A stretch of 64,000 nt of DNA, from assembly GCA_036785375.1 (NCBI GenBank), contig JAWMAR010000026.1, forward strand, positions 7,874,001 through 7,938,000, read 5' to 3'. Below are positions 8,954 to 40,251 of this stretch, piece by piece. The stretch's first letter is position 1. Every line of letters starts with the position of its first letter. The stretch is from Leucoraja ocellata. Taxonomy: Eukaryota. The notes beneath the pieces are model-generated. The model did not search any database, was not told the DNA's origin, and was given only the letters and a program-made list of their open reading frames with translations. The position numbers and the translations under genes were made by a program.

Positions 8954-9988
8954 TCATTTTTTCTTCGATTTGGCCCCATCTGTTTTCGAGAATCCATTCA
9001 GCTCCTCAGAGGCAGAAATCAGCTTCTGACTGGTTTTCACTAGTTTAATCTGTGAATACAATGTTTACGAAAAGGTCATTATTTATAGAAGAAAGCCACT
9101 TAAAAAAAAAAAAACACGTTTACTGTTCCGAATGACTTGCAACAACCCACAACCTACCTCTGCGTATGTGGTTCTTTCCTCCGTGCCTTTCATATTTGAA
9201 ACCATCTTTGACTTGGATAAATCTAATTCTGCATATGAGCAGAACTCATCATTTTCTTTTCCCGTTCGCTGCAAAATAATGTTTTATTCATATGTATCAC
9301 TCCTTATATGCAATTGAATTCGGATAGTGAATGCACAAGGGCAATTTCTCAAAAGAGTAAAAAAAATGCCATGGCAGCATGCCGAAAATCTTTACACGTT
9401 TGACTAATTTTATCAATGACATAACGTTTTCTTTTAAAACGCTGGAACATTTTGGGTCCTGCTTGTTAATCGATTTGAGCTCATCCTAATTGTTTCTGTG
9501 TTGTACGACTCCGGAATCACGTAGTACCCACACAGAATCATGCCATCCCGCCCACCGGGCTATGCTGATCTTTACGGCCTTGTACATTAATACCACTTGC
9601 TCTTATTCCCCACCTTATTCCCCATCTATTTACCTTGGTATCCTAAAGATTTTCGTACATAGAAATTGCATTTACCTCCATCGTCTGCTCTTGCTGTGCT
9701 TTTCAGGTCTCAACTGCTCCTTCTACAAGAACGACTGAATTCACTTCATTCTAAAACGTTCATCTTAATTAAAAGGAACCCACAATTGACAAAAAAATTG
9801 TAGTTCAAAACTAGGATGTCAGAGCTGTTCAAGGTGCATAAATAAATCCAATCGATATTCATGCGATATAGTTACAGGTTACTGTACTTGAGTGGAGAGC
9901 GTTAATGCCATAGGTTGAAATAACTCGTAAAAATCTTAGCTTACCGTGTCTTCAGCAATGTTTAAGGCGTTCGCCTGCCGTCCATTCC
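8954..9988 (-). CDS. Gene B cytoplasmic exons (9945-9988, 9158-9268, 8954-9049) with CSYAEL and TTYAEI motifs
   Basis: [15 protein letters not shown] | [37 protein letters not shown] | [31 protein letters not shown]; all junctions GT/AG and in frame. Confidence 0.8.
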
Positions 9989-12900
9989 CTAATAGAAAGT
10001 AAATTGAGGCCTCGGTGTTTAAACATGCGTTATATATACAATTGCTGCTGATTCTCACTACTTTGGCAGTACATTGACTGTAAATAACACATTTTTGCTT
10101 TGTTCAGATGCAGCTCCTCTGTCATCTTAATAGACACTAAACTTTATATTGCGCTAAACCACAGAGTAAGCAATATCTGTCAGGCATGATTACGCTCGCG
10201 ACCGAGCTGAAACAATCTCCACGTGTTTGTGCTGTGAAGCACTGCAGCATTTTATTTTGCAGATATTGCATCTCATCAAGATGGGTTTTGGGTCTAAAGG
10301 TTGTTACTTGTTTGTTATATCTGCTTTGGGGGAACATGTTGAACGAATCCTATGGTCCAAGTGGAATAGGATCTGACTGAATGATACTCCTCCGATGTGT
10401 GAAATGAATTTGCAGTATCACTTGTGAGTTCATTTCAGAAATTGTATGAATTATGTGAGAGGGGAGGGATTGCGGTAGAGTGGAAGGAAAAAACATGTCC
10501 TGGTGGACAGGAGGGGCATTGCAGGGCGGAAAGATTGGACTCAGTTGAAGAAGTAGAAATTATTAAGGAGAAATTTAAACTACTGGCAGTTGGCTGAATA
10601 TGTTTCTTTTTTTCTTTGAGGGGTACGACCATGGATCAGGCTGGAATCATGAGCGTTCCAACTAGGTCACATATAACGATCACGACCAGGCGAACTATTT
10701 GGAATAAGGAACGAAACCGAGGAATGGATAAAGTTATAAATGATGGTAAACATAGAAACATAGACACATAGAAATTAGGTGCAGGAGTAGGCCATTCGGC
10801 CCTTCGAGCCTGCACCGCCATTCAATATGATCATGGCTGATCATCCAACTCAGTATCCCGTACCTGCCTTCTCTCCATACCCCCTGATCCCCTTAGCCAC
10901 AAGGGCCACATCTAACTCCCTCTTAAATATAGCCAATGAACTGACCTCAACTACCCTCTGTGGCAGAGAGTTCCAGAGATTCACCACTCTCTGCGTGAAA
11001 AAAGTTCTTCTCATAGTAGAAATGCAAATATCTGCATTGATAAAGCCAGCTCAACCATAGGACAAACTGTGCTGTATGAGCGGAAATATATACTTGGGAA
11101 TTGTCATGCTTAGTTCTCTAGAGATTAAAATGGGGAGATGAAAACGTTTATTATGTCTTGTTGTAGAATCGGAGACCCCATTACAGTATTATGGAAAAGC
11201 CAATATCATGTGGTGTTGTTAAATAAATGTCCACCATGTTCGCCTTTGACCACCACGACTCTGTACGATCAGGATATTAAGGTGGTGGATTGTGACTGTT
11301 CGTGATGGCTATTAAGGAAGAAAAAGTAACCCTGATTCTTGTCTCATTCAGGTAATGCTTTTAGACATTTCGGAATGATGCACTAGTGAGGAATTATTTA
11401 AACATATGTTAAGGCAGCAGCAGAACCCGAAGCGGGATCAACATAGATAATGCATAGATAATGCGAGCAGTGTATGCAACGGGGCTATTCTTGATTTCAT
11501 GACCAATTATAACAGCTGATGGAAAAGACACAGAGAGTGGCGGCAAAGTGAATTAAAAATGACAAAAACACCATGTGACGCAGGGGAAGAAGCAGCGCAA
11601 GTATTTCTTAGGGATGTTAAAATACTCAAAGCATATGAGGAGACAACAAATAGAATGATAGACTGCGTGAGTAATATTTTTTCAGCAAGAACATAGGGAG
11701 CATGTGCGAGGTGTCAATCTCATCTGACCAGGGTCAAAGCGACGGGAGGCTTTCTATAATTAACTAGCCACCAAGTCGCCAATTGGATATCGACTCAACC
11801 ACTAAAGCAGTGGAGTCAAGATATGCGAAATGATTGCAACCTACGATCACTGACTACAGCTAGGCAAAGGGATCAAATATACCATGGACATCTGGGAGCA
11901 TGTATAATATGAGTTATGCTCCATGCCTCACACCGATTGAAGAATATAAGATTAGTCCCATACCAGCTTGAATAAAAGTACACAATGCCCCAGACCCGGC
12001 TGAAATGATTGACGAGCAAACAATGGCCATCTGTTTGGATGTATATCATCAAACGGCGAATGACTGGGCATGCCCAGAATATATTAATTAATATGATAGA
12101 GTATAGTTAGAGAGACTAAGAGTCGTGGAGGTATAGAGCCACACAAAACTATATCTTGCGTGACTCTATAAACGCACGTTGGCGCAACGGTTGGGTTGCT
12201 GCCTTACAGCGACAAAGACCCGGATTCGATCCTAACTACGGGTGCTGCTGGTACGGAGTTTGTAGTTTCTCCCTGTGACCTGCGTGGGTTTTCTCCTGGA
12301 GCTCCGGTTTCCTCCCACACCCCAAAGACGTACAGGTTTGTAGGTTAATTGGCTTGGTAAAGTTGTAAATTGTCCCTAGTATGTGTAGGATAGAATTAAT
12401 ATGCAGGGGTCGCTGGTCGGCGCTAGGTCGGTGGGCCGAACGGCCAGTTTCTGTGCTGTATGTCGAAACTCTAAAATCTAAACACGGAAACAGACCTTCG
12501 ACTCGACTTGCTCCTGTCGACCAAAATGCCACAACCACGCTAGTCGCTCTTGCACGCATTTGGTGGTATCTATGTAAACCTTTCATATACATGTACCCGT
12601 CCAAATGTATTTAAAATGTTGTTATGTTACGTGCTCCTACCACCTCCCATAGCAGCTCTGTCCGTTTACTCAACACCAAGAAAAATGTTGAAAGATAGAA
12701 CACCTGTGCGAAGATAACTGAAAGGTCGTGCTAGGAGAGGCAATGAATAGACGTTTACGGAGGTTTTAGATGACATGGCATAGCGTGGTGGTGTAAAGAT
12801 AAACACAGTGGATTGTAAATCAGGCTGAGTGCAATAATACTGATCCTAACCAAATTAACCCTGGCCCTAACCAGGCAAGAGAAGATTGAAAATTAGTCTG

Positions 12901-15900
12901 TGAATAAAGGGTGAAAGTTACAAAGAATCGTTGGTCACTTCTAAATGATTTCAAATACGTAAAGTCCGCATTGAACTAGCGTGTTGAGAGTGTAAAGCCT
13001 GTGGGCGCTGAATATAATTGGAACACCTTACGTTTTCTCAGAATGTTTCACAGCATATGCTGTTAATGCCTTGAATAAACCGACTTGTTTGAGAAACTCA
13101 CCACTAATCAATATTCTTGGTGTATGTCCCATTCTGCGCCGTAATTAAGGAGGGCAATTCACAGACGTGAAAGCTAGATTCAGGGTATAGGTCAGCACAT
13201 AATTCCCTCCATCACGACGTTGCCATAAAGTGGAGTATAACCCTAACCCACTTATGACCATTTTAAAAACACACGAAAAAGAATAAATACAAGCCGATTA
13301 ATTAGATGCTCACGTTTACTTCTCTTGATGTGTCGACACACCATCGTAATGATAAGCAGAAGAATAAATATAATTCCACCCGTTGCGCATCCATAAATAA
13401 GAAAATAGGTCGAATTATTCTCTGTAAAATAAAAGAATGAAAAACATATAACTAGAATTAACTGCCATTTCCAGAACAAGACAGATTAATTGTTGTCCCC
13501 GACCACTGGACCGTATAATTACCTTAAATTGCCCTAAGATTCTGCTCAACATCGTCACGGTTGGATTACGTACATTCTAGCTCAGAATGTCTTTCTGGGC
13601 ACAATTTGTCTAAATCACTAAAACATTTCGAAATAATTTTGCTCTATTTGAAAATTCCAACTACTTACATAGTATTAGTCTTAAATCATTCTGATTTGCC
13701 TACATCTGTGACGCAAACATCCGATAACACATTTGATAGTAGGGCTACTATATTTGCAGTTTATCTTCAAAGTGATTGTTATTCTATAGAGCATTGAGCA
13801 TAGAATAGTACAGCACGGGAACGGGCCAATCCGGCCGCAATATTTGTGCTAAAGATGCCGTCAAAAACCGAACACATCTCCCTGTACATAATCCATATTC
13901 CTCTAGTGCCTGTACTTCCATGTACCTCCAACACCACCACTGGCAAAGCACTTCAGATCTCCCTTAAGATCTCCCTTTTCAACTATATATTTAGCCAAGT
14001 ATTCTCCTGATCTATCCTCCTATTACTATATTCATTCGCAAGAGGTACTGGAAGAACTCTCCATTAAACAACTTCAGGGATCTTGCTCCTTAAACGTTTC
14101 CAAAGTCCAAAGTCAATGCACATCCACACTTCCCGATTGTGCTACTACTTTGGCCATTGGACACCAAACGTCTTTTTCGAAAGCGATCAATATTGGTCAC
14201 ACGATGAAACAAGCTATCCATAGCGCCGAAAGCACCGCGGATGCTGCACAGCGAATCCATCCTAAATACCAGATGCTCAAGAACTTAAGTCGGACGCTGA
14301 TGTTTAATGCATTTCCTGAAGGAATGGCCGCGAGCGCCATTAGACTTGTTGCTGGTCTCCCACAAAGCGCAGGATAAACATTGCACGTGCCCATCTCTCC
14401 TGATACGTATTGTACTTAAATTTATTTAATACTCTAAATGGAACAACCAAGTCGGTTAAGGGCTTTATCCGCTCCAACTACAATTTAGTATAATCTGAAA
14501 TCCACGCAGGGCTTAATTAGGAAAGGGGAATAGATTATGAAAGAAAACTGGCAGGGAACATAAAAACTGACTGCAAAAGCTTTTATAGATATGTGAAGAG
14601 AAAAAGATTGGTTAAAACAAATGTAGGTCTCTTGCAATCAGAAACGGGTGAATTGATGATGGGGAACAAGGACATGGCAGGCCAATTGAATAACTACTTT
14701 GGTTCTGTCTTCACAAAGGAAGACAGAAAGAATCTGCCGGAAATAGCAGGGGATCGGGGGTCAAATGAGATGGAGGAACTGAGTGAAATCCAGGTTAGGC
14801 GGGAAGTGGTGTTAGGTAAATTGAATGGATGAAAGGCCGATAAATCACCAGGGCCAGATAAGCTGCATCCCAGAGTGCTTAAGGAAGTAGCCCCAGAAAT
14901 AGTAGATGCATTAGTGATAATTTTTCAAAACTCTTTAGATTCTGGAGTAGTTCCTGAGGATTGGAGGGTATCTAATGTAACCCCACTTTTTAAAAAAGGG
15001 ATGGAGAGAGAAAACTGGGAATTACAGACCAGTTAGTCTAACATCGGCAGTGGGGAAAACGCTAGAGTCAGTCATTAAAGATGTGATAGCAGCATATTTG
15101 GAAAGTGGTGAAATCATTGGACAAAGTCAGCATGGATTTATGAAAGATAAATCATGTCTGACGAATCTTATATAATCTTTCGAGGATGTAACTAGTAGAG
15201 TGGATAAGGGGGAACCAGTGGATGTGATATATATGGACTTTCAGAAGGCTTTCGACAAAGTCCCACATAAGAGATTAGTATGCAAACTTAACGCACACGG
15301 TATTGGGGGTTCAGTATTGATGTGGATAGAGAACTGGCTGGCAGACAGTAAGTAAAGAGTAGGAGTAAACGTTTGCTTTTCAGAATGGCAGACAGTGACT
15401 AGTAGGGTACCGCAAGGCTCAGTGCTGGGACCCCAGCTATTTACAATATATATTAATGATTTGGACGAGGGAATTGAATGCAACATCTCAGGTTTGCGGA
15501 TGACACGAAGCTGGGTGGGCAGTGTTAGCTGCGAGAGGATGCTAGGGGACTGCAAGGTGACTTGGATGGGTTGGGTGAGTGGGCAAATGCATGGCAGATG
15601 CAGTATAATGTGGATAAATGTGAGGTTATCCACTTTGGTGGCAAGAACAGGAAAGTAGATTATTATCTGAATGGTGGCCGATTAGGAAAAGGGGAGATGC
15701 AACGAGACCTGGGTGTCATGGTACACCAGTCATTGAACGTAGGCAAGCAGGTGCAGCAGGCAGTGAAGAAAGCGAATGGTAAGTTAGCATTCATAGCAAA
15801 AGGATTTGAGTATAGGAGCAGGGAGGTTCTACTGCAGTTGTACAGGGCCTTGGTGAGACCACACCTGGAGTATTGCGTACAGTTTTGGTCTCCTAATCTG

Positions 15901-18900
15901 AGGAAAGACATTCTTGTCATAGATGGAGTACAGAGAAGGTTCACCAGACCGATTCCTAGGATGGTAGGACTTTCATATGAAGAAAGACTGGATAGACTCG
16001 GCTTGTATTCGCTAGAATTTGGAAGATTGAGGTGGATCTTATAGAAGCTGACAAAATTCTTAAAGGGATGGACAGGCTAGATGCACGAAGATTGTTCCTG
16101 ATGTTGGGGAAGTCCAGAACAAGGGGTCATAGTTTAAGGATAAGGGGGAAATCTTTTAGTACCGAGATGAGAAAACTATTTTTCACACAGAGAGTGGTGA
16201 ATCTGTGGAATTCTCTGCCACAGAAAGAAGTTGAGGCCAGTTCATTGGCTATATTTAAGAGGGATTCGCGATGTGGCCCTTGTGGCTAAAGGGATCAGGG
16301 GGTATGGGGAGAAGGCAGGTACAGGATACTGAGTGGGATGATCAGCCATGATCACATTGAATGGCGGTGCAGGCTCGAAGGGCCGAATAGCCTACTCCTG
16401 CACCTATTTTCCATGTTTCTATGTTTAACAATACTTTTTACAATACTTTTGCAACATAGCAATCAACCTCTCCATCGAAGCCACGTCGCTCTCCAAACAC
16501 GACTATCTGAATCCGCTACAATCGAACCTTCTAATCCTTTCTACGTTACCTGCTTTGGAATCCGGAACATGATACGTTGCAGTCAGTGGAGTAGGAAGAG
16601 TGAGGTGCGCCACTTGGCATGTATAGATCGACCCGCCCTGGAGTGTCCTTGTTTCCTTTAAATGACTGGAAACTTCATATAATCCAATCATAGTCAGTTT
16701 TACCGTTGTATGTATGCCCACGAAAATCTCAATGCCATTTCGGTACCAAGTAAGGTTAAGTGATCTCGGGTAAAATTCATCCGCTTTACACAAGAGATTC
16801 AATGTGGTGGAGTTTTGATCAGGCAGTTCGGAGATTCTGAGCTGAGCTGGCGGAACTGCAAATGTAAGACAGAAAATGTATTTGTGATCAGGAAAACTAC
16901 TACACGGGCATAACTATGTTGTACAATACTGGTCGGCGACCTCATAATTACACGGTTATGGTGCATGAACGTTCAGGATTAGCATTATTTCGGCAGTTTT
17001 TTCGGATATCAACAACATAAATCGTAGGTGGACAAAAATGCTGGAGAAACTCAACGGGTGAGGCAGCATCCAACGTCATCTATAGGTGACGTTTCGGGTC
17101 GAGACCCTTCTTCAGACTGATGTGGGGGTGTGGGGGGGGGGGGGGGGGAAGAAGAAAGGAAGAGGCGGATACAGAGGCTGTGGGAGAGCTGGGAAGGGGA
17201 TGGGGAAGGGGGAGAAAGCAAGGAATACCTGAAATTGAGAAGTCAATGTTCATACCTATGGGGTGTAAACTACCCAAGCGAAATATGAGATCCTGCTCCT
17301 CCAATTTGCGGTGGGACTCACGATGGCCATGGAGGAGGCCCAGACAGAAAGGTCGGATTCAGAATGGGAGGGGTAGTTGCAGTGCTGATCAGGTTGGTTA
17401 ATGTGAACTGAGTGGAGGTGGAGGGCGAAGCGATCGCCAAACCTGCGATTGGCCTCACCGATGTAAAGCATTTGACTCCTGGAACAACGGACGGAATAGA
17501 TGAAGTTGGAGGAGGTGCTGGTGAACCTCTGCCTCAACTGGAAGGACTGATTTGGTCCTTCGATGAAGTTGGGGGGGGGGGGGGGGGGGGGGGGGGTGGT
17601 AAAGCGACAAGTGTAGCATTTCCTGCAGTTTCAAGGGAAGAGTGTGGGAAGGCGCGAATTGACCAGGGCATTACGGAGGGAGCGGTCGCTGCAGCAAGCC
17701 AAAAGGGGAGAAGATTGGAAGATGTGTCCAGTGGTGGGATCCCATTGGAGGTGGCGAAAATGTCAGAGGATTACCTGTTGCACGTGCCGGTTGGTAGGGG
17801 GGAGGGGGGGGGGAGAGGTGAGGACAAGGGGGACACTGTCCTTGTTATGAGTGGTGGGTTGGAGAGTGTGAGCGGAGCTACGGGATATGGAGGAGACCCT
17901 GGTGAGAGCCTCATCTATAGTCGAAGACGGGAACGCACGTTTCCTAAAGAATGAGGACATCTCCGATGTCATGGTTTGGAACACCTTATCCTGGGTGCAG
18001 ATGCAGGAAGTGGAAGTAGGGGATAGAGTCCTTACAGAAAGCAGGTTGGGAAGAAGTGTAGTCCAGATAACCATGGGAATCAGTGGGTTTGTAGTAAATG
18101 TCGGCCAGTAGTTCGCTGCCTGCGTGGAGATAATGAGGTCTAGAAACGGTAGGGAGATGTCGGAAATTGTCCAGGTGAATTTGAGTGCCGGATGAAAGTT
18201 CGTGGTGAAAAGGATGAAGTCAGTGAGTTCTGCATGGGTTAAAAATAAAAGCCTTAATGAGCAAGTTGACAGCAAACATCTGAGAAGAATGAAAACTTTT
18301 TTTAGCGCTTCCAATCGTTTCCAATCGAATCTTATAGAATTTTTCCAGGATGTAACTAGTAGCGTGGATAGGGGAGAACCAGTGGATGTGGTGTATCTGG
18401 ACTTCCAGAAGGTTTTCGACAAGGTCCCACATAAGAGATTTGTATACAAACTTAAAGCACATGGCATTGGGGGTTCAGTATTGATGTGGATAGAGAACTG
18501 GCTGGCAAACAGGAAGCAAAGAGTAGGAGTAAACGGGTCCTTTTCACAATGGCAGGCAGTGACTAGTGAGGTACCGCAAAAGCTCAGTGCTGGGACCCCA
18601 GCTATTTACAATATATATTAATGATCTGGATGAGGGAATTGAAGGCAATATCTCCACGTTTGCGGATGACACTAAGCTGGGGGGCAGTGTTAGCTGTGAA
18701 CGGATGCTAGGAGACTGCAAGGTGACTTGGATAGGCTGGGTGAGTGGGCAAATGTTTGGCAGATGCAGTATAATGTGGATAAATGTGAGGTTATCCATTT
18801 TGGTGGCAAAAAGGGGAAAGCAGACTATTATCTAAATGGTGGCCGATTGGGAAAGGGGGAGATGCAGCGAGACCTGGGTGTCATGGTACAGCAGTCATTG

Positions 18901-20874
18901 AAGGTAGGCATGCAGGTGCAGCAGGCAGTAAAGAAAGCGAATGGTATGTTGGCTTTCATAGCAAAAGGATTTGAGTATAGGAGCAGGGAGGTTCTACTGC
19001 AGTTGTACAGGGTCTTGGTGAGACCGCACCTCGAGTATTGCGTGCAGTTTTGGTCTCCAAATCTGAGGAAGGACATTATTGCCATAGAGGGAGTGCAGAG
19101 AAGGTTCACCAGACTGACTCCTGGGATGTCAGGACTGTCTTATGAAGAAAGACTGGATAGACTTGGTTTATACTCTCTAGAATTTAGGAGATTGAGAGGG
19201 GATCTTATAGAAACTTACAAAATTCTTAAGGGGTTGGACAGGCTAGATGCAGGAAGATTGTTCCCGATGTTGGGGAAGTCCAGGACAAGGGGCACAGCTT
19301 AAGGATAAGGGGGGAATCCTTTAAAACCGAGATGAGGAGAACTTTTTTTCACACAGAGAGTGGTGAATCTCTGGAACTCTCTGCCACAGAGGGTAGTTGA
19401 GGCCAGTTCATTGGCTATAGTTAAGAGGGAGTTAGATGTGGCCCTTGTGGCCAAGGGGATCAGAGGGTATGGAGAGAAGGCAGGTACGGGATACTGAGTT
19501 GGATGATCAGCCATGATCATATTGAATGGCGATGCAGGCTCGAAGGGCCGAATGGCCTACTCCTGCACCTAATTTCTATGTTTCTATGTTTCTATGTTTT
19601 TTCGAAGAGTGTGAATTGCTACCTCTGTTGAATTTTTTTTTTACAAAAAATGGTCAGTTTAGCATTAACTAACTCGGCACTTCACGGATTTGCTCTGTTT
19701 TTCAAATCCCAGACTGAAGTTTTCTTGAAGTAAGAACAAATTAATTGGTAAAAAAAACCAACACATAGGAATATCAGGTGTCGCCATTTATGTTTACTCG
19801 GGGGAGATGAGGAGACGTTAGATATCGCTCCGGCAATTTGATACCGCGTTGGATGTAAACAAAATCTAGCTATGGTAGAAGGCCGATAGGGAGGGTCCAT
19901 GATGAGGGGAATGTTGGAAACGGGAGAAGTGACCGTAACAGGGCGGCCGTTGATGCCGCTCCGGCAGTTGGAAATAAAATAGTCCAAAGAAATTACATCC
20001 AACGTTTTGTCCTGCCCCTCCACTCTTCCAGCTTTATACCTCCCACCCAATGCAGATATCAGATCACATTCATCGGCCTCGGAAAGTACTGCTCAATATA
20101 GGAACTGTGTTGGAATCTGTGTTTCGGCGAATTTGGAGCAACGTCCTCATATTAACAGCAAACAAACCAACCAATTAGACAGTCCTGGGATATTAAGACA
20201 CAATATTACATAGAACTTGGGTACTTCGAATGGAAAACCAGGCCACGTTGCTTTCCCGAATTATAGAATTGAATAATAATAGGGTAACATCTCCATATTG
20301 CAGCGCATTTGCTTTTACTGTTACACATACCGAAGACGTTGATTCTGGAGCCAGATCCATTCACAATTTTACTTCCGTGGATACCCACTCCGCAGTAATA
20401 GACTCCAGCATCATCTGCACGGATATTCAATATCTGCAAGGAGGCTGCACCTTGTTTAAAACGAACAAATATCTTCCTACTGTCAGAGGCTGTTTGCAGA
20501 AAGTTCTGTTCGCCAAGTTTCCACCAATAATATTCCACAGGTAGACTATTTTGCGATAGTCCAATAAGGCAATATAGGGTGATATTTGAATGTAAGATCA
20601 CGTGTTTGCTCGTCGGAGATTGTTTGACTTGGTAGTGAGCATCAACGGCAACTGTAGCAGAAGAAAATCAAAAATTATCGCATAACAGACGAGGCCAGAC
20701 ACAATTAATCGCACTTTTGAAAGATGCGTGAATGTGGATGTGCGGTCGATATACGGGTGTTGATCAAAGAGGGTGTAGGTCAGTAAGAAGATAAAAACAA
20801 AAGAAAAGTCGAGAAATACCTGCATTTATAATCAGGAGCGACGAAAACAACAGAACCACATCCCGAAAAGGCAT
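8954..20874 (-). CDS. Gene B: complete VJ-C1-TM-cytoplasmic IgSF receptor (346 aa), inhibitory type; exons 20820-20874, 20331-20651, 16550-16855, 13314-13421, 9945-9988, 9158-9268, 8954-9049
   Basis: Seven exons with GT/AG boundaries and compatible phases sum to 1041 nt, open to TGA at 8954-8956. Exon sizes match paralogues (55-nt leader, 306-nt C1, 44-nt first cytoplasmic exon). Confidence 0.85.
10748..11012 (-). mobile_element. CR1 3' end
   Basis: (CATAGAAA)n tail and the reverse complement of the CR1 3' UTR. Confidence 0.9.
12172..12480 (+). mobile_element. V-SINE (HE1-like)
   Basis: TGGCGCAACGG...GATTCGATCC head; CTCCGGTTTCCTCCCACACCCCAAAGAC core. Confidence 0.8.
13314..13421 (-). CDS. 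Gene B transmembrane exon (uncharged TM)
   Basis: [36 protein letters not shown]; TTTTACAG acceptor and GTGAGC donor (an alternative GTAAAC donor 6 nt earlier has the same phase). Confidence 0.82.
14507..16425 (+). mobile_element. CR1 LINE, about 1.9 kb, 5'-truncated and disrupted, in the gene B C1-TM intron
   Basis: Continuous RT homology with stops and frameshifts; ends in TTTCTATG. Confidence 0.93.
16550..16855 (-). CDS. Gene B C1-set Ig exon
   Basis: [23 protein letters not shown]...GLYEVSSHL...[13 protein letters not shown] carries the C1 motifs CxxxxFYP, W and YxCxVxH; 306 nt, phase 1/1. Confidence 0.92.
17025..18236 (-). mobile_element. Penelope-like element (RT end, GIY-YIG, terminal repeat)
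   Basis: [25 protein letters not shown]; [35 protein letters not shown]; terminal hammerhead motif. Confidence 0.85.
17088..17115 (-). ncRNA. Minimal type I hammerhead ribozyme motif in Penelope terminus
   Basis: Reverse strand CTGAAGA-A-GGGTC-TC-GACCC-GAAAC-GTC: conserved CUGANGA and GAAA cores, stem II and a GUC cleavage triplet. Confidence 0.7.
18327..19598 (+). mobile_element. CR1 LINE, 5'-truncated, in the gene B V-C1 intron
   Basis: [23 protein letters not shown]2 C-terminus and (TTTCTATG)n. Confidence 0.93.
20331..20651 (-). CDS. Gene B VJ exon
   Basis: [30 protein letters not shown]...[11 protein letters not shown]...[36 protein letters not shown]; acceptor CTACAG, donor GTATGT; 321 nt. 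Confidence 0.9.
20820..20874 (-). CDS. Gene B leader exon
   Basis: [18 protein letters not shown] plus phase-1 GT donor; 55 nt as in genes A, C and E. Confidence 0.85.
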
Positions 20875-29330: not shown

Positions 29331-30392
29331 GTGTTTTCGATGATTCCAAATCTTGAGTATCTTTCTAATGGAGAAGACAGACCAGTTTGGTTCCACTACA
29401 AGACATTAAGAGACGACGTTCACAGCCAAATGATTATGAGCCCACTCCTACAAAAAGCCTAATGGTTACAAAGAGAATTGAGCCCCAGAATATTTCACCA
29501 TATTGAATTAGATATCTAAGAGGCCTGCAATGGGGAACTAATACCTGGTGCCTAAAATTCCTTAGCTTATTGGTGGATCAAACGAGGAGGTGATAAGAGT
29601 GTCTCTAATATCACGGCGCGAAATGTGCATGTGCTGTCAGTTTGACGAGAGTAATCCAGTGAAATAAAAATGCTTAACATTTGAAAACCACAAGTCATGC
29701 GATTGAGGGATTATGGATGTATAAAATTTCGAATTCATTAACATTCACTAAATCGGAATCTTGAATTAATTACTTGGTATGAAAGAAAATAATCAATTGA
29801 TAACCACATGCACCAAGCTTCCAAATAAAACAATAATAACAATGAGATGGTCTTGCAACAATTATAAGTTAGCCAAGCTGCGCGAGCCCCCTCAATCAAG
29901 AAGGAAACGTGCCTATTATAACTTCACAGTACATTAAAAAAAGTAGGTCCGCGGCAATGAAAGTGAAGAATTACATTTTGTGAATAGATAGGCGAATGCA
30001 CAGAGTATTTTACCCAGAGTACTGGAATGAAAAACTCAAGGACAATTGTTGAAGGTGAGGGGAGAGAGATTTAATTTGTTTTAAATTGACAGGCACTGCA
30101 TTCACATAGCGGGTTCGCAACGAGTCGTGTCAGATACTACAACAGCATGTATTGTATATTTAGGTAGGTACATATATAGGAAACGTTTAGAGGGATACGG
30201 GTCAAACGCGGGTAGGTGTGATTATTGGGGCATATTGGACGGCATGAAGCATGTCCCAAGGGCCTGTTTCCATGTTGTATGACAATGATACTATGATTCT
30301 AGGACTCCATTAATAGAATCAAATTAGCGAATAATTCATTTCCACCAGAGTAACTGACATTTTTCGATTCGCTGCCACATCGCCCGTCGAAT

Positions 30393-32273
30393 TTAGTTGT
30401 TATTTTTCACCCCGCTATATATTACACTTATTTCTTTATGTTGCCGTTTCAAATTATTTTTGGAGCTTGACGTGTTCAAGGAAGCGTACGCCAGTTGGGT
30501 ATCAGCAGCAGCCATAATTGCGATCTGTGCACAAATGTTTGCTATTGTTAATTGGACAAGAACATTACAAATTTCTCCGAATAAGACGGATCTGTGTTCT
30601 CAGATGTGTTGAGTGAAAGCGTGAAACCAACTTTACCTTTGCATACACTGGGCTCTCCATGTGCTCTTCAGGTTTCCCTTATTCTTTGCAGCGGACACGA
30701 TGGGCGTGCATCGGATTGCGGTTAACGTTCTCACCTTCTTCCTGGGAATTCATGAACTTATTTTAAGATTAGTTATACTACAGATGAAGGTTTCGCTCGG
30801 AATGCGCTGTCAAGAATATACGAGGGACAATTATTTTTTGTTTTGTCTCGAATGACTTATTGCATGAAGACCAATTTCCAGTGTCTAAACGACTGTGGGG
30901 CAAACAGTCGCAACTGGACAGATCAAAATGATAACTGCACATAACATAGAACATAGACCGGCACAGCATAGGGACGCGCCCTTCAGCCCAAACTATTTAG
31001 ATCCAATTGGTTGAGCCTTGGATACCCTCTACTTCCCTTCTTAAACAAAGAAACAACATGGCCACTCTCCAGTATTCCAAAATCTCGCATGTGGCTGGAC
31101 AAGGAACAGTAAGGCGCAATGAAAATATTCCTTTCACCACACCTGGTGTAAACAATATATTTGATATTTATAATAAATGCGAACTTCTGAAATGCATGTT
31201 GTATTGTTCAGTATGCCCTCTTTTGTGTAGTGTACTGTGAACTTCACTGATTGTGAATACATTCAAACAGAATAAGATAGGTTGGGTGAGTGGGCAAATG
31301 CATGGCAGATGCAGTATAATGTAGATACATGTGAGGTTATCCACTTTGGTGGCAAGAACAGGAAAGTAGATTATTATCTGAATGTGGCCGATTAGGAAAA
31401 GGGGAGATGCAACGAGACCTGTGTGTCATGGTACACCAGTCATTGAAAGTAGGCACTCAGGTGCAGCAGCCAATGAAGAAAGCGAATGGTAAGTTAGCAT
31501 TCATAGCAAAAGGGTTTGAGTATAGGAGCAGGGAGGTTCTAATGCAGTTGTACATGGCCTTGGTGAGACCACACCTGGAGTATTGCGTACAGTTTTGGTC
31601 TCCTAATCTGAGGAAAGACATTTTTGACATTGAGTGGGTACAGAGAAGGTTCACCAGACTGATTCCCGGGATGGCAGGACATTCTTATGAAGAAACACTG
31701 GATAGACTCGGCTTGTACTCGCTGGAATTTGGAAAATTGAGGGGAATCTTATAGAAACTTACACCATTCTTAAAGGGTTGGACAGGCTGGATGCACGAAG
31801 ATTGTTCCCGATGTTGGGGAAGTCCAGAACAAGGGGTCACAGTTTAAGGTTAAGGAGGAAGTCTTTTAGGACCGAGATGAGAATTTATTTTTTCGCACAG
31901 AGAGTGGTGAATCTGTGGAATTCCCTGCCACAGAAAGTAGTTGAGGCCAGTTCATTGGCTACATTTAAGAGGGAGTTAGATGTGGCCCTTGTGGCTAAAT
32001 GGATCAGGGGGTATGGGGAGAAGGCAGGTACAAGATACTGTGTTGGATGATCAGCCATGATCATATTGAATGGTGGTGCAGGCTCGAAGGGCCGAATGGC
32101 CTACTCCTGCACCTATTTTCTATGTTTCTATGTTAGACGTGCTCCTTATTAAAACGGCTTCGTTTCAACAAAGGCACAATCCTGTCTCTACTTCACAAGT
32201 GGAATAGTCATATATTAAATTAGCCTTACCCAACTTTGTGTCCGATTTGTATTTACTGTACGCTTCTTTGCAC
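30393..32273 (-). pseudogene. Relic ITIM-bearing cytoplasmic exons of gene C (32230-32273, 30637-30741, 30393-30524), downstream of the stop
   Basis: 44-nt exon GAKKRTVNTNRTQSW; 105-nt exon EEGENVNRNPMHAHRVRCKE*GKPEEHMESPVYAK with in-frame TAA at 30679-30681; final exon IAIMAAADTQLAYASLNTSSSKNNLKRQHKEISVIYSGVKNNN*. Exon order and phases match gene B. Confidence 0.78.
31277..32133 (+). mobile_element. CR1 LINE 3' part, between the relic exons of gene C
   Basis: ORF2 C-terminus and TTTCTATG tail. Confidence 0.92.
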
Positions 32274-32451
32274 CTGGTCGGAAAAATAAAATAGTGATAA
32301 ATGGCCGTGCGACATGGTGGGTTTTTTTGCACGCCAAGAACGTAATACCATGTCATAATTGCACGATAGAGTTTCACTATATACGGCTTCACTACATATG
32401 AATGAAGGCTTAAACCACGTTGTTTGTGCCACGCTTTTTCCAAAATGTTGG

Positions 32452-32712
32452 ACGACACAGTGGTGTTGCATGTAAATGCGGAGTTTGGGGCACGTTCTCC
32501 CTGTGACCACGTGGGTTTCATCCCTTGCTCCAGTATACTCCCAAATCTCACGAATGTGCGGATTTATGGGTTAATGGACCTCTTTAAATTGCCGCCACTG
32601 TGTATTGAGTGGCTGCGAAAGTAGGTTAACGTAGAGCTAGTGTGAACGGATGATCGATGGCCGGCGTGGAATCGATGGGTTAAAAGGCCTGTTTCTCTGC
32701 GCTAGCTTTCAA
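32452..32712 (+). mobile_element. Degenerate V-SINE
   Basis: CACGTTCTCCCTGTGACCACGTGGGTTT core. Confidence 0.55.
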
Positions 32713-33030
32713 CCAATGAAACACATTTTTATCACAAAATTCACAGATGTTCAGATCTTGACCAATAGGTACAATTAAATGCTGGCTGCTATGTGATGAT
32801 GTGTTGAAATAATACATAAATTCAAAATATGTGATCATCAAACATTAGTCACATGCAAAATTGAATATCTTCGTTAAGTCGGTGCTGTTTGCTATAAATT
32901 ATTATACTATAATCATAATTTTTCCCCGTGCAAATGTTTCATTTTCTCTATTATCAAGATCGTGTAATTACCAACACTGTTATATTATACTGGGATAATA
33001 TGTATGTTAAAAAATGGTTGAGAAACATAC

Positions 33031-33131
33031 CTATATATATATATGTGCCATCACGATGATAACGATGAATATTAAAATGAATACTGCACCTCGGATACTT
33101 CCAGCGATTAGAGCAGATACACCCTCGACAG
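33031..33131 (-). CDS. Gene C transmembrane exon with Arg (CGA at 33091-33093), ending in TAG
   Basis: CCCACAG acceptor; hydrophobic stretch alignable to gene B TM; TAG at 33031-33033 directly followed by a GTATGT donor. Confidence 0.8.
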
Positions 33132-36100
33132 CTGTGGGAGGTTAAACCAATGACACAAATGTTTATGTTTTATTAAGTTGTTTTAAAGTAGACTTTGCGG
33201 AATACAAATCAAGATATTTCAAATGTTCACTCATTGGATTTCACCAGAACCGCGTGGAATGCGGCAACAGCCAACAATTTCGATATATGGCGCGATTACG
33301 AGTGAAATAAATAGATCTTAAGTGAACCTTGTGGGATATTGACCGTTACGAGACAGAAAATTGTGGAAGATAATACATTAATTTAGATATATTCTGTTCA
33401 CCAAATCTCGAAGGAGATGTTAATGTTACTGACGCTGGCCAGGAGTGAATTATTACAGACGTCTTCTCTCCACTGACAGTCCCCAATTAATGCAAGAGCC
33501 AACAAGTTAGTTCTCATAGATAGACTGAAAATGCTGGCGTAAGTTAGCGAGTCAGGCAGCATCATTGGAGAAAATGGAGAGGTGACGTTTTGTGTCGGGA
33601 CTATTCTTCAGACTGGTTGGTAGCAACAAAAAACAGGAGCAATCGGGACTACGATATGGCCCCACGCAGGGAGATTCCTGATAGGCCGACGTTATCCCAA
33701 GAGGGATACATTGTTGCGAATTGTGGGACTGGAAAATCGATATTTAGAGGAGGAAGGGGGAAATTGAGAGGGCGAGGGAGGTGAGTGCTTATGGACATTA
33801 CTAAAATTTGTGAATTCAACGTTCATGCCGCTGGCTTGTATTCTATACAAGTGAAATATGAGGTGCTGTTCGTCGAATTTGCTTTCGCCACTGTGCAAGG
33901 CAGGTCCTCGGACAGAAAGGTCAGTGTAGAAATGAAAAGGGCAATTAAAATACTTAGCTACTGGGAAGGTGCGTGTGAACTACTGTCCAACCTGGAGAGA
34001 CTGTCGGAGTCCGTGCATAGAGGCGAGGAAGGAGGTAACAGGGACAGGTGTTACATCTCCTGCTGCTGTAGAGAAACGTACATCGGGTTGGGGTGGTCTG
34101 GGTTTAAATGGATGAATGAACCATAGGTGTGGAGGAACAGTCTGCAAAAAGCGGAAATGCATGGAAATGTACATATGTGATTAATTATGGGATGATGTTG
34201 GGGGCGACGGAAATGTCCGAAGATGATGTTTAGGATTGCGGTGGCTGGTGGGTGAATGGAGAGAGAGAAGGGAAGCAGAGAGCGGTATCAGAGATAGTCC
34301 AGGTAAATTTGAGGGCAGGGTGGGAATAAGTGGGAATTTGAGTTCTGCACGGGTGTAGGATGTAGCATTTATTGTCGAGGACTGGCCGCTCTGTATCGCA
34401 AAGGAGGTCAGGGGGTGGTGAAAACACGACAGAGGTGAGGGCCGGGGGCAGGGGCGAGCAGAGGTGCAGAAGCACGCTGCGGGCGTGGGAGACAGAGGGC
34501 TTCAGAGAGGAGGGGTTGGGAGGAGCTGTGCATGGGCGGGCAGGGGAGGGTTATTAAGGTCATAAGGAATAGTAGAAATGGGCAATTCGGCCCATCATGT
34601 CCACTGCGCCATTAAATCATGGCTGATATATCTCGCCCTCCTAACCCCATTCTCTTGCCTTCTCCCCATGACGTCTGACATCTGTAGTAGGAGTAGAGTG
34701 GTTAGGAGCACGAAAATCTCATGGCCTCTGTTTCTTCCTTGAAACGAGACCAAATATATTTTTCTCTACGAACAATCTCCTGTGTCTAGAGGAATTTGTC
34801 GTCACCCTCAACAACTTCTCTTTTGACTCCTCTCACTTTCTCCAAGTTAAAGTTGCAGCTGGACACTCACATCAGCCACAGCTACTGGCTACCAATTTGT
34901 TTGTTACATTGTGCAGTGGAATTTTATTTAAGTACAAAATAGAACCCGCTGGCGTTACCCTCGTTCTCGAATACATCGACCACTACGCTGGGGCTACTTC
35001 CTGCTATCCGTGCAACACTTTACCTTCATGAGGAACCGTGTAGTTGGCAGTTGCTGGAGTTAGCATAGAACGGTGAATAATTTTACATGTGTAAACGGTT
35101 CCTTCTTTGACTGGCCGTTTCTCCTCTAAAAAACTGATAACTTCATACAATCCGTCTGCCGTTGAACTTTGTTCATGCCGAAATCCAGATTGGATGACGG
35201 AACCATTTGTATGCCAGGTGAGATTAAATTCTTTCGGGTAAAAGGCAGCCGTTCTGCACTGCATTTTCAGGAAATGAGTCGCAGTATTTCTAGATCGAAC
35301 GGATACAATCTTCAGAGGAGAAGGGACAGCTAGGTAAAGAGGAATAAAATTAAAAGAAAGGGGAAAAGTCGATTACATTATCCAATGGCATTTGTTCCAA
35401 CGCTACTTAATTCCATCATAATTTTTAAATCGGGAGCCAGATGAAGGTGTAATTCATCGCGATTGACTCCCCCCCCCCCCCCACCACTCCCCCCCCCCCC
35501 ACCCCTCCCTTGACATGCATTCCCTTGACATTTAATTTAAGAAAAAAGCACTAATTTGCACACTTGTTTCTTGTGCTAACATGCGCGAATCAACTTTCAA
35601 GTTTCAACTCTTTAAAGGCACAGTACTGTGACACATAAACAGTTGCAGACTTTGACTGGCTTACAGAGGATGCTTTCACTAACATTTATTGTTTCTCTAA
35701 TTCGGCGCAAGAAATATAATTTATATTTCAATTATTTTGTGGAAGTAAAAACCTCGCTCTTTCAATTCACAGGATTATATGTTGATAACATCATTAGGAA
35801 AACATCTGGAGGATCCCCGCCTCGGCGTTCAGTGTCAAATTGAAACGTTGTATTTATTCATCTTCCACTCACTACCTTCAATATACATCAACTCAAATAT
35901 CATCCCTGTCATGCCCTCTGAACTATATTTTCAAACGAATCAATCCAGAACAATGTCCCACCGTTTTGCACATTTGTATTCTGGATTAAAGACTTTTGTG
36001 AAGCAAACCCAAATTCGAGCTGCAACTAAAGTACCGTTCGCTCACCATAAACGATCAGTTGCTCTCTTGTTTCCTTCCCAACCGGTCGGCCCGCTTGTTT

Positions 36101-36705
36101 TGGAAGACAATAGTATGTTCCGGCGTCCGAGACCGTGACATTCAGCAGGTGAAGGTAGGCGCCTCCTGCCCGTATAGTGAAGATTTTCCTGCTATCTTCT
36201 TTCAGGAAGCCTTTATTTCCATCTTTCCACCAGAAAACCTCCAGGTTTGACAGATTTACATTGAAGGGGAAGGGACACCGACAGGTAAAATTTATGCCAA
36301 TGATCACCGTATTCTGAACAACATTCGATATCGTCTTGCCCGACCTGTTCTCAGCAGCTGCCAATAGATGGTGCACAATCCAGTTTAGTCATTGATATAT
36401 AGCAATGGAAATGTAACAATGCAGGCAAAAATCTTATTGCACTCAGCCCAAAAACTTACAATGAATTGAACCGAATTATTATGCCCGCTTTTTGTGTCCA
36501 CGTAAAGGTTTCGTAAATTACACTCCTTTCCAGAACTCATACAACAGCAAAGACATAATGGACAATTCGGCATGACATTATAAGGTACAACTATCATATC
36601 TGCGTAAATTAAAGACCCATAAATAAAAAGCAATAGAAGCCCTAATTTACCCGCATTCAAAATTCCAAGGAAATACATCGTCCAAGGTGACACTTTCAGA
36701 AACAT
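33031..36705 (-). CDS. Gene C: VJ-C1-TM IgSF receptor (257 aa) with Arg in TM and no tail; exons 36651-36705, 36046-36357, 35024-35329, 33031-33131
   Basis: Leader MFLKVSPWTMYFLGILNA; V ...FTCRCPF...VFWWKDGNKGFL...LLNVTVSDAGTYYC...; C1 MQCRTAAFYPKEFNLTWHTNG...GLYEVISFL...YTCKIIHRSM; TM AVEGVSALIAGSIRGAVFILIFIVIIVMAHIYI*. Total 774 nt in frame with GT/AG junctions. Confidence 0.82.
33515..35010. mobile_element. Degenerate Penelope fragments (33515-34330 on -, about 34700-35010 on +) with an intervening CR1 tail (34560-34690, -)
   Basis: EQHLIFHL...GMNVEF and [12 protein letters not shown] on -; the + segment encodes VVTLNNFSFDSSHFLQVK. Confidence 0.6.
35024..35329 (-). CDS. Gene C C1-set exon
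   Basis: 306 nt, same size as gene B C1; CRTAAFYP, W and YTCKIIH motifs. Confidence 0.9.
36046..36357 (-). CDS. Gene C VJ exon
   Basis: 312 nt, phase 1/1; DAGTYYC; GGCAG acceptor, GTGAGC donor. Confidence 0.88.
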
Positions 36706-39764: not shown

Positions 39765-40060
39765 ATTATATGATAGGTTCTTGACTGGTTTCATTTAAAA
39801 CCGTTTAACCCGCAAGTTTGTGGAATGTGGAAGTGCATTGTACTGTCAGCACGCTCACATTCAGCTACAACGGTTGCGCCCCCTACCCGTAATGTTCTGC
39901 TATCTCTTCTCAGGAAGTTCTTATTTCCGTCTTTTTGCCAGTGCACCGTTACGTTGGGTTGATTAAGATCGAAGAGGAATGGAAATTGGGGTGTAACGTT
40001 CATTTTGTTGAGCTGCGTCTTCTGAGCAGCATCGGATGTCGCTTTCCCCCATAGGTCCAG
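39765..40060 (-). pseudogene. V pseudo-exon (D), paralogue of the gene C V domain; 5' boundary approximate
   Basis: FPFLFDLNQPNVTVHWQKDGNKNFLRRDSRTLRVGGA aligns with gene C FPFNVNLSNLEVFWWKDGNKGFLKEDSRKIFTIRAGGA. Both cysteines are lost, frameshifts and stops follow, and a GTGAGG donor remains at 39759-39764. Confidence 0.72.
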
Positions 40061-40251
40061 AGTAATGGGCAACATAAATTACATCATTAAACCAATCTTC
40101 TCGTGGTTTATCAACACGAGCAACAAAAAGTTTCGGATTCAAGTTGTTTTTGCTGACATTTAATGTAAGATTTTTTATCGGTTCTTGTATCTTTCTCATT
40201 TACAATTGTTATAAAAGCAAGACAAACAATGAGTTTTGTTTCACACAATTT

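What the first reader, a model, noticed from the sequence alone, without database searches (positions are those of the whole stretch)
30393..33131. Gene C: an inhibitory receptor apparently converted into an activating one, with its ITIM exons left as relics
Seen: the gene C TM (LIAGSIRGAVFIL) has Arg where gene B has Gly ([14 protein letters not shown]), and it ends in TAG. Three exons homologous to the gene B tail remain downstream with intact splice sites (44 nt vs 44 nt; 105 vs 111 nt; final exon). In them the first motif YAEL of gene B reads HAHR at the same codons 12-15, an in-frame TAA follows at 30679-30681, and PVYAKI, LAYASL and VIYSGV survive beyond it. Established: activating members of paired families (KIR-S, activating Ly49, SIRPbeta) combine a basic TM residue that binds an ITAM adaptor with a short tail, and activating KIR and Ly49 arose from inhibitory ancestors. 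Inference: the same transition occurred here independently, making B and C a tandem inhibitory/activating pair.
Basis: partly seen in the sequence, partly recalled or inferred. Interest (0 to 1): 0.87.

Follow-up and report, generated by a model that had tools for sequence, protein, structure and literature searches.

The report
Activating-type receptor with fossil inhibitory tail
An immune receptor gene of a ray-like cartilaginous fish looks like an activating receptor but still carries the disabled exons of an inhibitory tail, which is a familiar evolutionary switch seen here in an old, little-studied lineage.

Summary
The sequence observation is correct. Gene C (minus strand) has intact leader, V and C1 exons. 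Its TM exon carries Arg and ends in TAG. Three spliceable tail exons follow, with Y>H, an in-frame TAA and two canonical ITIMs.

- The Arg was not gained here. Gene C groups (100/98, 100/99 support) with proteins of four other batoids that all have Arg at the same TM place and short ITIM-less tails.
- Gene B is a distant paralogue (43-44% identity), not a partner.
- The TAG comes from one extra TA unit in a six-unit TA run (exon 101 nt; 99 or 102 nt keeps frame). An independent DNA data set lacks that unit and has a 111-nt second tail exon, as in gene B. TAA is therefore probably the older stop, and TAG a recent change that is not fixed.
- TAA lies 42 nt before the last junction, so it should escape NMD. 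TAG lies 149 nt before it, so the window allele may be a weak or null allele.
- Three RNA runs showed no reads on any unique exon. Tissues are unknown, so expression is untested.

First-stage notes list similar tail truncations elsewhere in this genome (unchecked). This is a new member of a known kind and of moderate interest.

The parts
36651..36705 (-). Leader exon of gene C. ATG is at 36705-36703, and the exon has 18 codons plus 1 nt (phase 1).
   Evidence: Sequence. tblastn matches the first 18 residues of Pristis P0168 (78% identity) and Hemitrygon P0178 (72%) at 36705..36652.
36046..36357 (-). V-type Ig exon, open and in phase 1/1, with both Cys and the WW motif kept.
   Evidence: Pfam gives Ig_3 at 1.5e-5, ig at 1.4e-4 and V-set at 3.6e-4, the last below its cut-off. 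Identity to Pristis P0168 is 67%. The exon breaks 1 of 12 subfamily-invariant positions.
35024..35329 (-). C1-set Ig exon, open and in phase 1/1.
   Evidence: Pfam C1-set gives 6.3e-9 and 36.5 bits against a cut-off of 21. Identity is 66-67% to Pristis, Mobula and Hemitrygon. The exon breaks 0 of 20 invariant positions.
33031..33131 (-). TM exon of 101 nt. The helix is VSALIAGSIRGAVFILIFIVIIVMA, followed by HIYI and TAG.
33091..33093 (-). Arg codon CGA, about 10 residues into a 25-residue hydrophobic stretch.
   Evidence: It is unchanged in DNA contig record 4 of run X3. The same position holds Arg in 4 of 4 batoid orthologue species and in Heterodontus P0010.
33032..33044 (.). Alternating A/T run of six TA units at the 3' end of the TM exon. 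Its length puts TAG (33033-33031) in frame directly before the donor.
   Evidence: Run X3 contig record 4 leaves out 2 letters at 33032. That gives a 99-nt exon with no TAG and the phase-1 end that T1 needs.
32230..32273 (-). Tail exon T1, 44 nt. It needs a 1-nt carry from the TM exon and reads AKKRTVNTNRTQSW.
   Evidence: It has the same length and phase as gene B T1. Its similarity to shark tails is weak.
30637..30741 (-). Tail exon T2, 105 nt, phase 0. His (30708-30706) replaces the ITIM Tyr, TAA sits at 30681-30679, and PVYAK lies at the end.
   Evidence: Run X3 record 3 has 6 extra letters behind 30699 and C>A at 30698, which gives 111 nt as in gene B. TAA lies 42 nt before the T2/T3 junction.
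30393..30524 (-). Tail exon T3 with two canonical ITIMs (LAYASL, VIYSGV) and the original stop.
   Evidence: It aligns to the C-termini of the inhibitory proteins P0011, P0161, P0162 and P0163, and of P0166, which has a TM Arg plus an ITIM.
30070..30075 (-). ATTAAA, the only canonical poly(A) signal found in the 793 nt scanned downstream of T3. None lies in the TM-to-T1 intron.
31280..32134 (.). Retroelement fragment inside the T1-T2 intron. It is not part of the gene but explains the reads laid there.
   Evidence: Reverse-transcriptase-like ORFs. Depth is very high in all four runs.

Best explanation
Gene C is this species' member of a batoid-wide clade of SIRP-like V-C1-TM receptors. These receptors carry an Arg in the outer third of the TM helix and have no signalling tail, so they are of the activating, adaptor-dependent type.

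The ancestor of the wider shark/ray subfamily had a three-exon tail with ITIMs. Gene C still carries those exons as fossils.

The likely order of events, inferred from one other DNA data set and from outgroups, is:
1. Arg was present before the batoids split.
2. The first ITIM Tyr became His, and a TAA arose in T2. TAA lies 42 nt before the last junction, so by the recalled 50-55 nt rule the mRNA should be stable. It would encode an Arg-TM receptor with an ITIM-less tail of about 40 residues.
3. In the window's haplotype only, a 6-nt deletion occurred in T2.
4. Also in the window's haplotype only, one extra TA unit was added at the end of the TM exon. This puts TAG in frame and leaves a 4-residue tail.

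No poly(A) signal lies in the next intron, and the tail exons keep their splice sites. The TAG allele would therefore have its stop 149 nt before the last junction and may be degraded by NMD.

Gene B is an unrelated neighbour from another subfamily, not the inhibitory partner.

Shown: the anatomy, the orthology, the Arg conservation and the variant allele. Inferred: adaptor pairing, NMD behaviour, expression and the order of events.
For: -
- Orthology: the V and C1 exons sit in a 5-row batoid clade (100/99* and 100/98*) in 31-row trees, with 61-67% identity to those proteins.
- Arg: Pristis, Hemitrygon, Hypanus and Mobula read WIVRGAV or WIVRGSL where gene C reads GSIRGAV. Their tails are 1 to about 37 residues past the TM exon and hold no ITIM.
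- Recurrent switching: Heterodontus has a pair at 87% identity, with G plus ITIMs in P0011 and R plus a 17-residue tail in P0010. Stegostoma has P0162 (G) and P0166 (R).
- Tail homology: T3 against shark C-termini.
- Ectodomain not degraded: 0 of 20 and 1 of 12 invariant positions are broken, no worse than annotated genes.
- Variant allele: X3 contig record 4 (377 nt, 0 other letters) lacks 2 letters at 33032. Record 3 has the 6-letter insertion.
Against: - No RNA read lay on the C1, TM or T2 exons in 3 of 3 RNA runs, and there was next to none on the T3 bin. T1 could not be judged because its bin is swamped by repeat reads. No gene C splice joint was seen.
- No skate protein model of this gene turned up in three protein searches.
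- Gene C's terminal branch (0.38-0.40) is about twice that of Pristis (0.14-0.16).
- In the C1 exon, 3 of the 4 differences between the window and X3 change the amino acid (my reading).
- Two stops plus an indel fit a dying gene equally well.
- One of the 5 differences of X3 record 3 is not listed, so retention of TAA in X3 is not fully certain.
- A 2014 survey found no FcRgamma homologue in shark genomes (PMC4016189, passages read), so the adaptor is unknown.
Confidence: 0.58

Rival explanations
1. Recent pseudogene or null allele. Gene C, at least in the window's haplotype, makes no stable product. TAG at the end of the TM exon exposes the mRNA to NMD, and the gene is drifting after loss of function.
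For: - There are two in-frame stops, Y>H and a 6-nt deletion in T2.
- TAG lies 149 nt before the last junction, and there is no canonical poly(A) signal in the TM-to-T1 intron.
- RNA depth is zero on unique exons in 3 of 3 runs.
- No skate protein model was found.
- The terminal branch is long.
Against: - The leader, V, C1 and TM exons are all open with intact splice sites.
- 0 of 20 and 1 of 12 invariant positions are broken.
- Ray orthologues with equally short tails are annotated as genes.
- The tissues of the RNA runs are unknown.
- The C1 exon differs less from X3 than the adjacent intron does: 4 listed differences in about 300 nt against 7 listed in about 140 nt.
Confidence: 0.3
2. An inhibitory gene was converted to an activating one locally and independently, creating a B (inhibitory) / C (activating) tandem pair.
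For: Arg-TM plus a stop plus relic ITIM exons. Gene B lies next door with the same tail exon lengths and phases.
Against: - Arg is shared by 4 of 4 batoid orthologue species.
- B and C are 43-44% identical and fall in different major clades.
- Gene B's nearest relative is Mustelus P0120, not gene C.
Confidence: 0.08
3. Assembly error. The extra TA unit is a length error in a dinucleotide run, and the true gene reads on into T1 and T2.
For: The only X3 contig listed across the exon has one TA unit fewer. Dinucleotide runs are error-prone in some read types (recalled).
Against: - X3 differs from the window at 25 listed single-letter places in unique sequence, so it is another haplotype, individual or close species and not a check of this assembly.
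- At 33032 only 26.8 of 64.3 depth units carry the deletion.
- A 13-nt run is short for such an error.
Confidence: 0.1
4. Live dual receptor. The lineage kept Arg-TM together with a working ITIM tail, as in Stegostoma P0166. Alleles without TAA and TAG still circulate, and the window shows a broken allele.
For: - T3 is about as conserved against Heterodontus (16 of 35 by my count on the alignment) as the ectodomain (49-55%).
- All six tail splice sites are intact.
- TAG is not fixed.
- P0166 and Mustelus P0120 combine a TM Arg with an ITIM.
- First-stage note s1-885263 reports such a neighbour gene (unchecked).
Against: - No difference is listed at TAA or at the His codon in X3.
- The four ray orthologues have no ITIM tail.
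Confidence: 0.07

Closest known systems
Activating KIR (KIR2DS/3DS), derived from inhibitory KIR; also activating Ly49 and PIR-A (recalled knowledge)
   Same: A basic residue sits in the TM helix. The ITIM tail is cut off by a premature stop in a cytoplasmic exon close to the last junction. The former tail exon remains downstream as untranslated sequence.
   Different: The fold and family differ: V plus C1-set domains, not C2/D-type Ig or lectin. No near-identical inhibitory partner lies in the window. The Arg is old and shared across batoids. A second, younger stop comes from a TA-repeat slip.
SIRP family (SIRPalpha inhibitory; SIRPbeta with Lys-TM and DAP12)
   Same: - The N-terminal V domain has a J-like end and is followed by a C1-set domain.
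- Inhibitory members have multi-tyrosine tails.
- RefSeq names the relatives 'tyrosine-protein phosphatase non-receptor type substrate 1-like' or 'SIRP beta-1-like'.
- SIRPgamma and SIRPalpha are among the PDB hits of the C1 exon, at E 1.5e-10 and 1e-8.
- A rodent SIRPalpha is a weak hit of P0011, at E 1.5e-11 and 30% identity over 35%.
   Different: There is one C1 domain rather than two. The TM residue is Arg high in the helix, not a Lys as in SIRPbeta (recalled; no call). Orthology to tetrapod SIRPs is unproven. One 2026 survey places the SIRP family's origin at Tetrapoda (PMC13262535, passage read).
Heterodontus francisci pair XP_067905931 (P0011) / XP_067905013 (P0010)
   Same: They belong to the same subfamily and have the same TM type (AGCAGGAL versus AGCARGAL; gene C reads AGSIRGAV). 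Arg is at the same place, the activating copy has a truncated tail, and the inhibitory copy's C-terminus aligns to gene C's T3.
   Different: The two shark genes are a species-specific pair at 87% identity. Gene C has no such partner in the window and belongs to the batoid branch.
KIR2DL4 / chicken CHIR-AB type dual receptors with TM Arg plus ITIM (recalled)
   Same: If the ancestor of gene C carried both Arg and the ITIM tail, as Stegostoma P0166 does, it was of this type.
   Different: In gene C the ITIMs are now behind a stop.

Membership tests
Activating member of a paired immune-receptor family | Basic residue inside the TM helix | tested here: met
   Arg (33093-33091) lies about 10 residues into a 25-residue hydrophobic stretch. 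It is conserved in 4 of 4 batoid orthologue species.
Activating member of a paired immune-receptor family | Short cytoplasmic tail without ITIM | tested here: met
   The window allele has 4 residues after the helix. The variant allele would stop at TAA in T2, before the ITIMs.
Activating member of a paired immune-receptor family | Inhibitory partner with a near-identical ectodomain | tested here: not met
   Gene B is 43% (V) and 44% (C1) identical and in another clade. Only a decayed V-like fragment at 39791-40075 resembles gene C. The rest of the genome was not searchable.
Activating member of a paired immune-receptor family | Association with an ITAM adaptor (FcRgamma, DAP12 or CD3zeta) through the TM charge | not testable with these tools
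   This needs co-expression experiments. PMC4016189 (passages read) found no FcRgamma homologue in the shark genomes of 2014.
Activating member of a paired immune-receptor family | Expressed and spliced mRNA | tested here: inconclusive
   Depth is zero on the C1, TM and T2 exons in X7, X11 and X14. Tissues are unknown, and only 5-25% of each run was read.
SIRP family | V-set domain followed by C1-set domains | tested here: inconclusive
   One Ig V-like exon (V-set below its cut-off, ig above it) and one clear C1-set exon. Mammalian SIRPs have two C1 domains (recalled).
SIRP family | Orthology to tetrapod SIRP genes / CD47 binding | not tested
   There are only weak sequence links. No synteny or ligand data exist.
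Unitary pseudogene | Disabling changes spread over the whole coding region | tested here: not met
   The lesions are confined to the end of the TM exon and to T2. The leader, V and C1 exons are open with intact splice sites.

The most novel reading that the evidence does not exclude
The gene C lineage was a dual receptor (TM Arg plus a working ITIM tail) from before the skate/ray split until recently. In this species a short TA microsatellite placed exactly at the TM-exon donor acts as a length-polymorphic switch. Together with the T2 stop, it yields alleles with a 4-residue tail, a roughly 40-residue ITIM-less tail, or possibly a full ITIM tail. The population would then carry activating, neutral and inhibitory versions of one receptor.
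Probability: 0.1. Interest if true: 0.65.

Novelty: new member of a known kind. Interest (0 to 1): 0.4.

Why it matters
- Paired inhibitory/activating receptors are well studied in mammals and birds but hardly described in cartilaginous fish. My searches of the held paper library found no account of this shark/ray V-C1 family.
- The locus shows the usual route from inhibitory to activating: a TM Arg, loss of the tail by a stop near the last junction, and fossil ITIM exons. It shows this in the oldest jawed-vertebrate lineage.
- G/R switches recur at one TM position in several species.
- Arg-TM receptors are widespread in a group where FcRgamma was reported missing in 2014. That makes the identity of the signalling adaptor in sharks and rays a concrete, testable question.
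- The TA-slip allele is a reminder that a stop seen in one assembly may be an allele and not a gene's fixed state.

Tried and rejected
- Comparison with ray and shark loci.
- Skate orthologue models. Searches with P0011 and P0168 returned no skate protein. A search with gene C's V exon alone returned nothing. That tool only sees proteins of 0.55-1.75 times the query length.
- RNA evidence. The single read-laying run gave no read on unique exons, so neither the 3' end nor splicing could be defined. Reads at 31280-32279, 34480-34679 and 35280-35679 are repeat families, not gene C.
- Gene B as inhibitory partner: rejected.
- Escape of the TAG allele from NMD by intronic polyadenylation. No AATAAA or ATTAAA lies in the TM-to-T1 intron. 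An upstream alternative donor in the TM exon would put T1 in a frame with a stop (my reading).
- Dating the tail loss. T3 identity to Heterodontus is about 46%, against 49-55% for the ectodomain. With slow elasmobranch rates this fits both an old relic and recent loss, so it is not decisive.
- Literature. Four searches found nothing on chondrichthyan SIRP-like paired receptors. Supplementary files were not consulted.
- Spliced model. 
Full report
**What is there.** The window has no N and carries several genes of one Ig-receptor family. On the minus strand, gene C runs from a leader exon (36705..36651), through a V-type exon (36357..36046) and a C1-set exon (35329..35024), to a TM exon (33131..33031). 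Three small exons follow: T1 (32273..32230, 44 nt), T2 (30741..30637, 105 nt) and T3 (30524..30393).
- All exons have AG acceptors and GT donors.
- Pfam finds C1-set in the C1 exon ORF (6.3e-9, 36.5 bits against a cut-off of 21).
- Pfam finds weaker generic Ig and V-set matches in the V exon ORF.
- The TM exon translates VEGVSALIAGSIRGAVFILIFIVIIVMAHIYI*. Arg (CGA, 33093-33091) lies inside the hydrophobic stretch, and TAG (33033-33031) abuts the donor.
- T2 reads EEGENVNRNPMHAHRVRCKE*GKPEEHMESPVYAK.
- T3 reads IAIMAAADTQLAYASLNTSSSKNNLKRQHKEISVIYSGVKNNN*.
- Gene B's exons are 102, 44 and 111 nt plus a last exon. SYAEL stands where gene C has MHAHR.

T1 must receive one nucleotide from the TM exon. 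T2 is read in phase 0, and T1 is 44 nt (2 + 42).
- Gene B's TM exon is 102 nt (2 + 99 + 1) and fits.
- Gene C's is 101 nt and does not fit.
- The end of gene C's exon is a 13-nt alternating A/T run (33032-33044, six TA units) followed by G|gt.
- With five units the exon would be 99 nt, TAG would vanish, and the frame would run into T1.
- Exactly this form exists. In DNA run X3 (Logan contigs, coded organism B), the one contig listed across the exon leaves out two letters at 33032. It is record 4: 377 nt, 32861-33239, no other differences, depth 26.8. At that place 26.8 of 64.3 depth units carry the deletion.
- The Arg codon is unchanged in that contig.

**The second tail exon also differs.** X3 record 3 (30535-30869) has six extra letters behind 30699 and C>A at 30698.
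- That makes T2 111 nt, as in gene B.
- By my reading it restores Leu-Asp-Leu after His-Ala-His, where gene B has YAELDL and Stegostoma P0162 has YAALNL.
- No difference is listed at the His codon or at TAA. One of record 3's five differences is not shown, so a small doubt remains.
- X3 differs from the window at 25 listed places in unique sequence. It is therefore another haplotype, individual or very close species, and not a check of this assembly.
- Outgroups share the 111-nt, in-frame state. The window's extra TA unit and its 6-nt deletion are therefore the derived, younger changes. Y>H and TAA are shared and older (inference).

**Consequences for the mRNA (inference, using the recalled 50-55 nt NMD rule).**
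- TAA lies 42 nt before the T2/T3 junction, so an in-frame allele should give a stable mRNA. That mRNA would encode an Arg-TM receptor with an ITIM-less tail of about 40 residues, much as in activating KIR.
- TAG lies 149 nt before the last junction.
- The TM-to-T1 intron has no AATAAA or ATTAAA. The only canonical signal after T3 is ATTAAA at 30075.
- The window allele is thus a candidate for NMD.

**RNA.** Three RNA runs (X7, X11, X14; 5-25% of each read) were examined.
- They gave depth 0 over the C1, TM and T2 exons and at most 0.5 in the bin that holds T3.
- T1 lies in a bin swamped by repeat reads and cannot be judged.
- No gene C splice joint was seen.
- All substantial coverage is on repeats.
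- Tissues are unknown, so this does not show silence.

**What family.** A full HMMER search with the C1 exon found 452 proteins at E <= 1e-3.
- The single-domain hits are V-C1-TM proteins of sharks, rays and chimaera.
- RefSeq labels them 'tyrosine-protein phosphatase non-receptor type substrate 1-like', 'signal-regulatory protein beta-1-like', 'tapasin-related-like' and similar.
- Many have long tails with several LxYxxL or TxYxx motifs. Others have Arg in the TM segment and short tails.
- PDB hits of the C1 exon are generic C1-set domains. SIRPgamma (1.5e-10) and SIRPalpha (1e-8) are among them. The V exon gives only generic Ig hits.

**Orthology.** Among the proteins then held, gene C's exons are closest to Pristis P0168 (67% V, 67% C1), Hemitrygon P0169 (61%, 66%) and Mobula P0170 (54%, 66%).
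- I built trees of 31 rows: 28 of the 184 fetched proteins plus three window exons.
- Gene C falls in a five-row batoid clade with Pristis, Hemitrygon, Hypanus and Mobula, with support 100/98* (C1) and 100/99* (V).
- All four species have Arg at the same TM place (WIVRGAV or WIVRGSL against gene C's GSIRGAV).
- Their tails hold no ITIM. Mobula and Hypanus end one residue after the TM exon.
- The Arg and the short-tail design are therefore old in this lineage.

**Shark members of the same subfamily.**
- Heterodontus has P0011 (AGCAGGAL, long tail ending ...LVYAAVKNSN) and P0010 (AGCARGAL, 17-residue tail), at 87% identity.
- Stegostoma has P0162 (Gly, ITIMs) and P0166 (Arg plus LTYAAL), with identical V domains.
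- Gly/Arg switching at this spot therefore recurs.

**Gene B is not the partner.** It is 43% (30 of 70, V) and 44% (35 of 80, C1) identical to gene C. It sits in the other major clade (13 rows), nearest to Mustelus P0120.

**The tail exons are true fossils.**
- T3 aligns to the C-terminus of P0011 (tblastn E 4e-6 in the window).
- T3 beats all 1000 shuffles against 5 of 5 shark tails.
- T2 is reached by 0-42 of 1000 shuffles in 4 of 5 tails and by 709 of 1000 against P0166.
- T1 is weak.
- T3 is about as similar to Heterodontus (16 of 35 by my count) as the ectodomain is (49-55%).
- Given slow elasmobranch rates, this cannot tell an old relic from a tail that worked until recently.
- It keeps open the reading that the lineage long combined Arg with an ITIM tail, as P0166 and P0120 do.

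**Is the ectodomain decaying?** I used a leave-one-out count over 16 subfamily rows. Gene C breaks 0 of 20 invariant C1 positions and 1 of 12 V positions, which is no worse than annotated genes.
- Against X3, the C1 exon shows 4 listed differences in about 300 nt, and the adjacent intron 7 in about 140 nt.
- Three of the four exon differences change the amino acid (my reading).
- Gene C's terminal branch (0.38-0.40) is about twice that of Pristis.
- Taken together, the ectodomain is intact but perhaps evolving fast. Pseudogenisation, if any, is recent.

**Adaptor.** Arg in the outer third of the helix resembles FcRgamma-type partners (recalled). A 2014 survey reported no FcRgamma homologue in shark genomes (PMC4016189, passages read). 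The partner is unknown.

**Literature.**
- Four searches found no paper on this chondrichthyan family.
- PMC13262535 (passage read) lists the SIRP family under Tetrapoda.
- PMC11599192 (passage read) lists SIRP among the joined-VJ IgSF members.
- Supplementary files were not seen.

**Earlier notes of this scan.** Unchecked first-stage notes mention a neighbour gene with TM Arg plus ITIM (s1-885263). They also mention other tail truncations in this genome, one by a microsatellite-like stop (s1-885282, s1-885222, s1-885039). I used them as leads only.

**Limits.**
- The species is inferred to be a batoid, probably a skate, only from the nearest proteins.

**Verdict.** Gene C is an old Arg-TM, activating-type SIRP-like receptor gene with fossil ITIM exons. 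The TAG is a recent, unfixed TA-repeat slip that may make the window allele a null allele. Gene B is not its partner. It is a new member of a known kind, with interest of about 0.4.

Noticed in passing
window 39791-40075 (-): A decayed V-exon-like ORF of the gene C type lies about 3 kb upstream of gene C's leader. It matches P0011 at 47% over 70 residues. It has no Pfam hit and, by my reading of the ORF translation, lacks the first Cys. It may be the remnant of a former tandem duplicate or partner.
   Followed up: partly
window 433-771 (-): Another V exon of the family lies at the window's start. It matches P0120 at 37% with E 2e-18. The rest of that gene lies outside the window.
   Followed up: no
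window 51919-52383 (+) and 61155-61478 (+): The V and C1 exons of a plus-strand family member lie about 9 kb apart. Its branch in both trees is very long (1.05 and 1.68). Its TM exon and tail lie beyond the window. First-stage note s1-885263 says a nearby gene combines a TM Arg with an ITIM.
   Followed up: partly
gene B, window 8953-20601 (-): Gene B's nearest relative, Mustelus P0120, has Arg in its TM segment (VIYRSTAGAFIF) together with a LAYASL tail. Gene B itself has Thr/Gly there and only non-canonical motifs (CSYAEL and TTYAE|I).
   Followed up: partly
fetched proteins P0007, P0165, P0167, P0174, P0176, P0182: A second TM type with Arg, of the form ..LIYRS..(D/N)H.., occurs in shark and chimaera proteins. 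The shark ones (P0007, P0165, P0167, P0174, P0182) group with gene C's subfamily by ectodomain, whereas chimaera P0176 falls in the other clade. The family therefore has at least two different activating TM designs.
   Followed up: no
window 31280-32134: A retroelement fragment in the T1-T2 intron belongs to a family that is very abundant in DNA and transcribed in all three RNA runs. Many reads end sharply at 32131-32134.
   Followed up: no
window 16800-19700: Gene B's V-to-C1 intron is filled with reverse-transcriptase-like ORFs from LINE copies. The same element type recurs at many places in the window.
   Followed up: no
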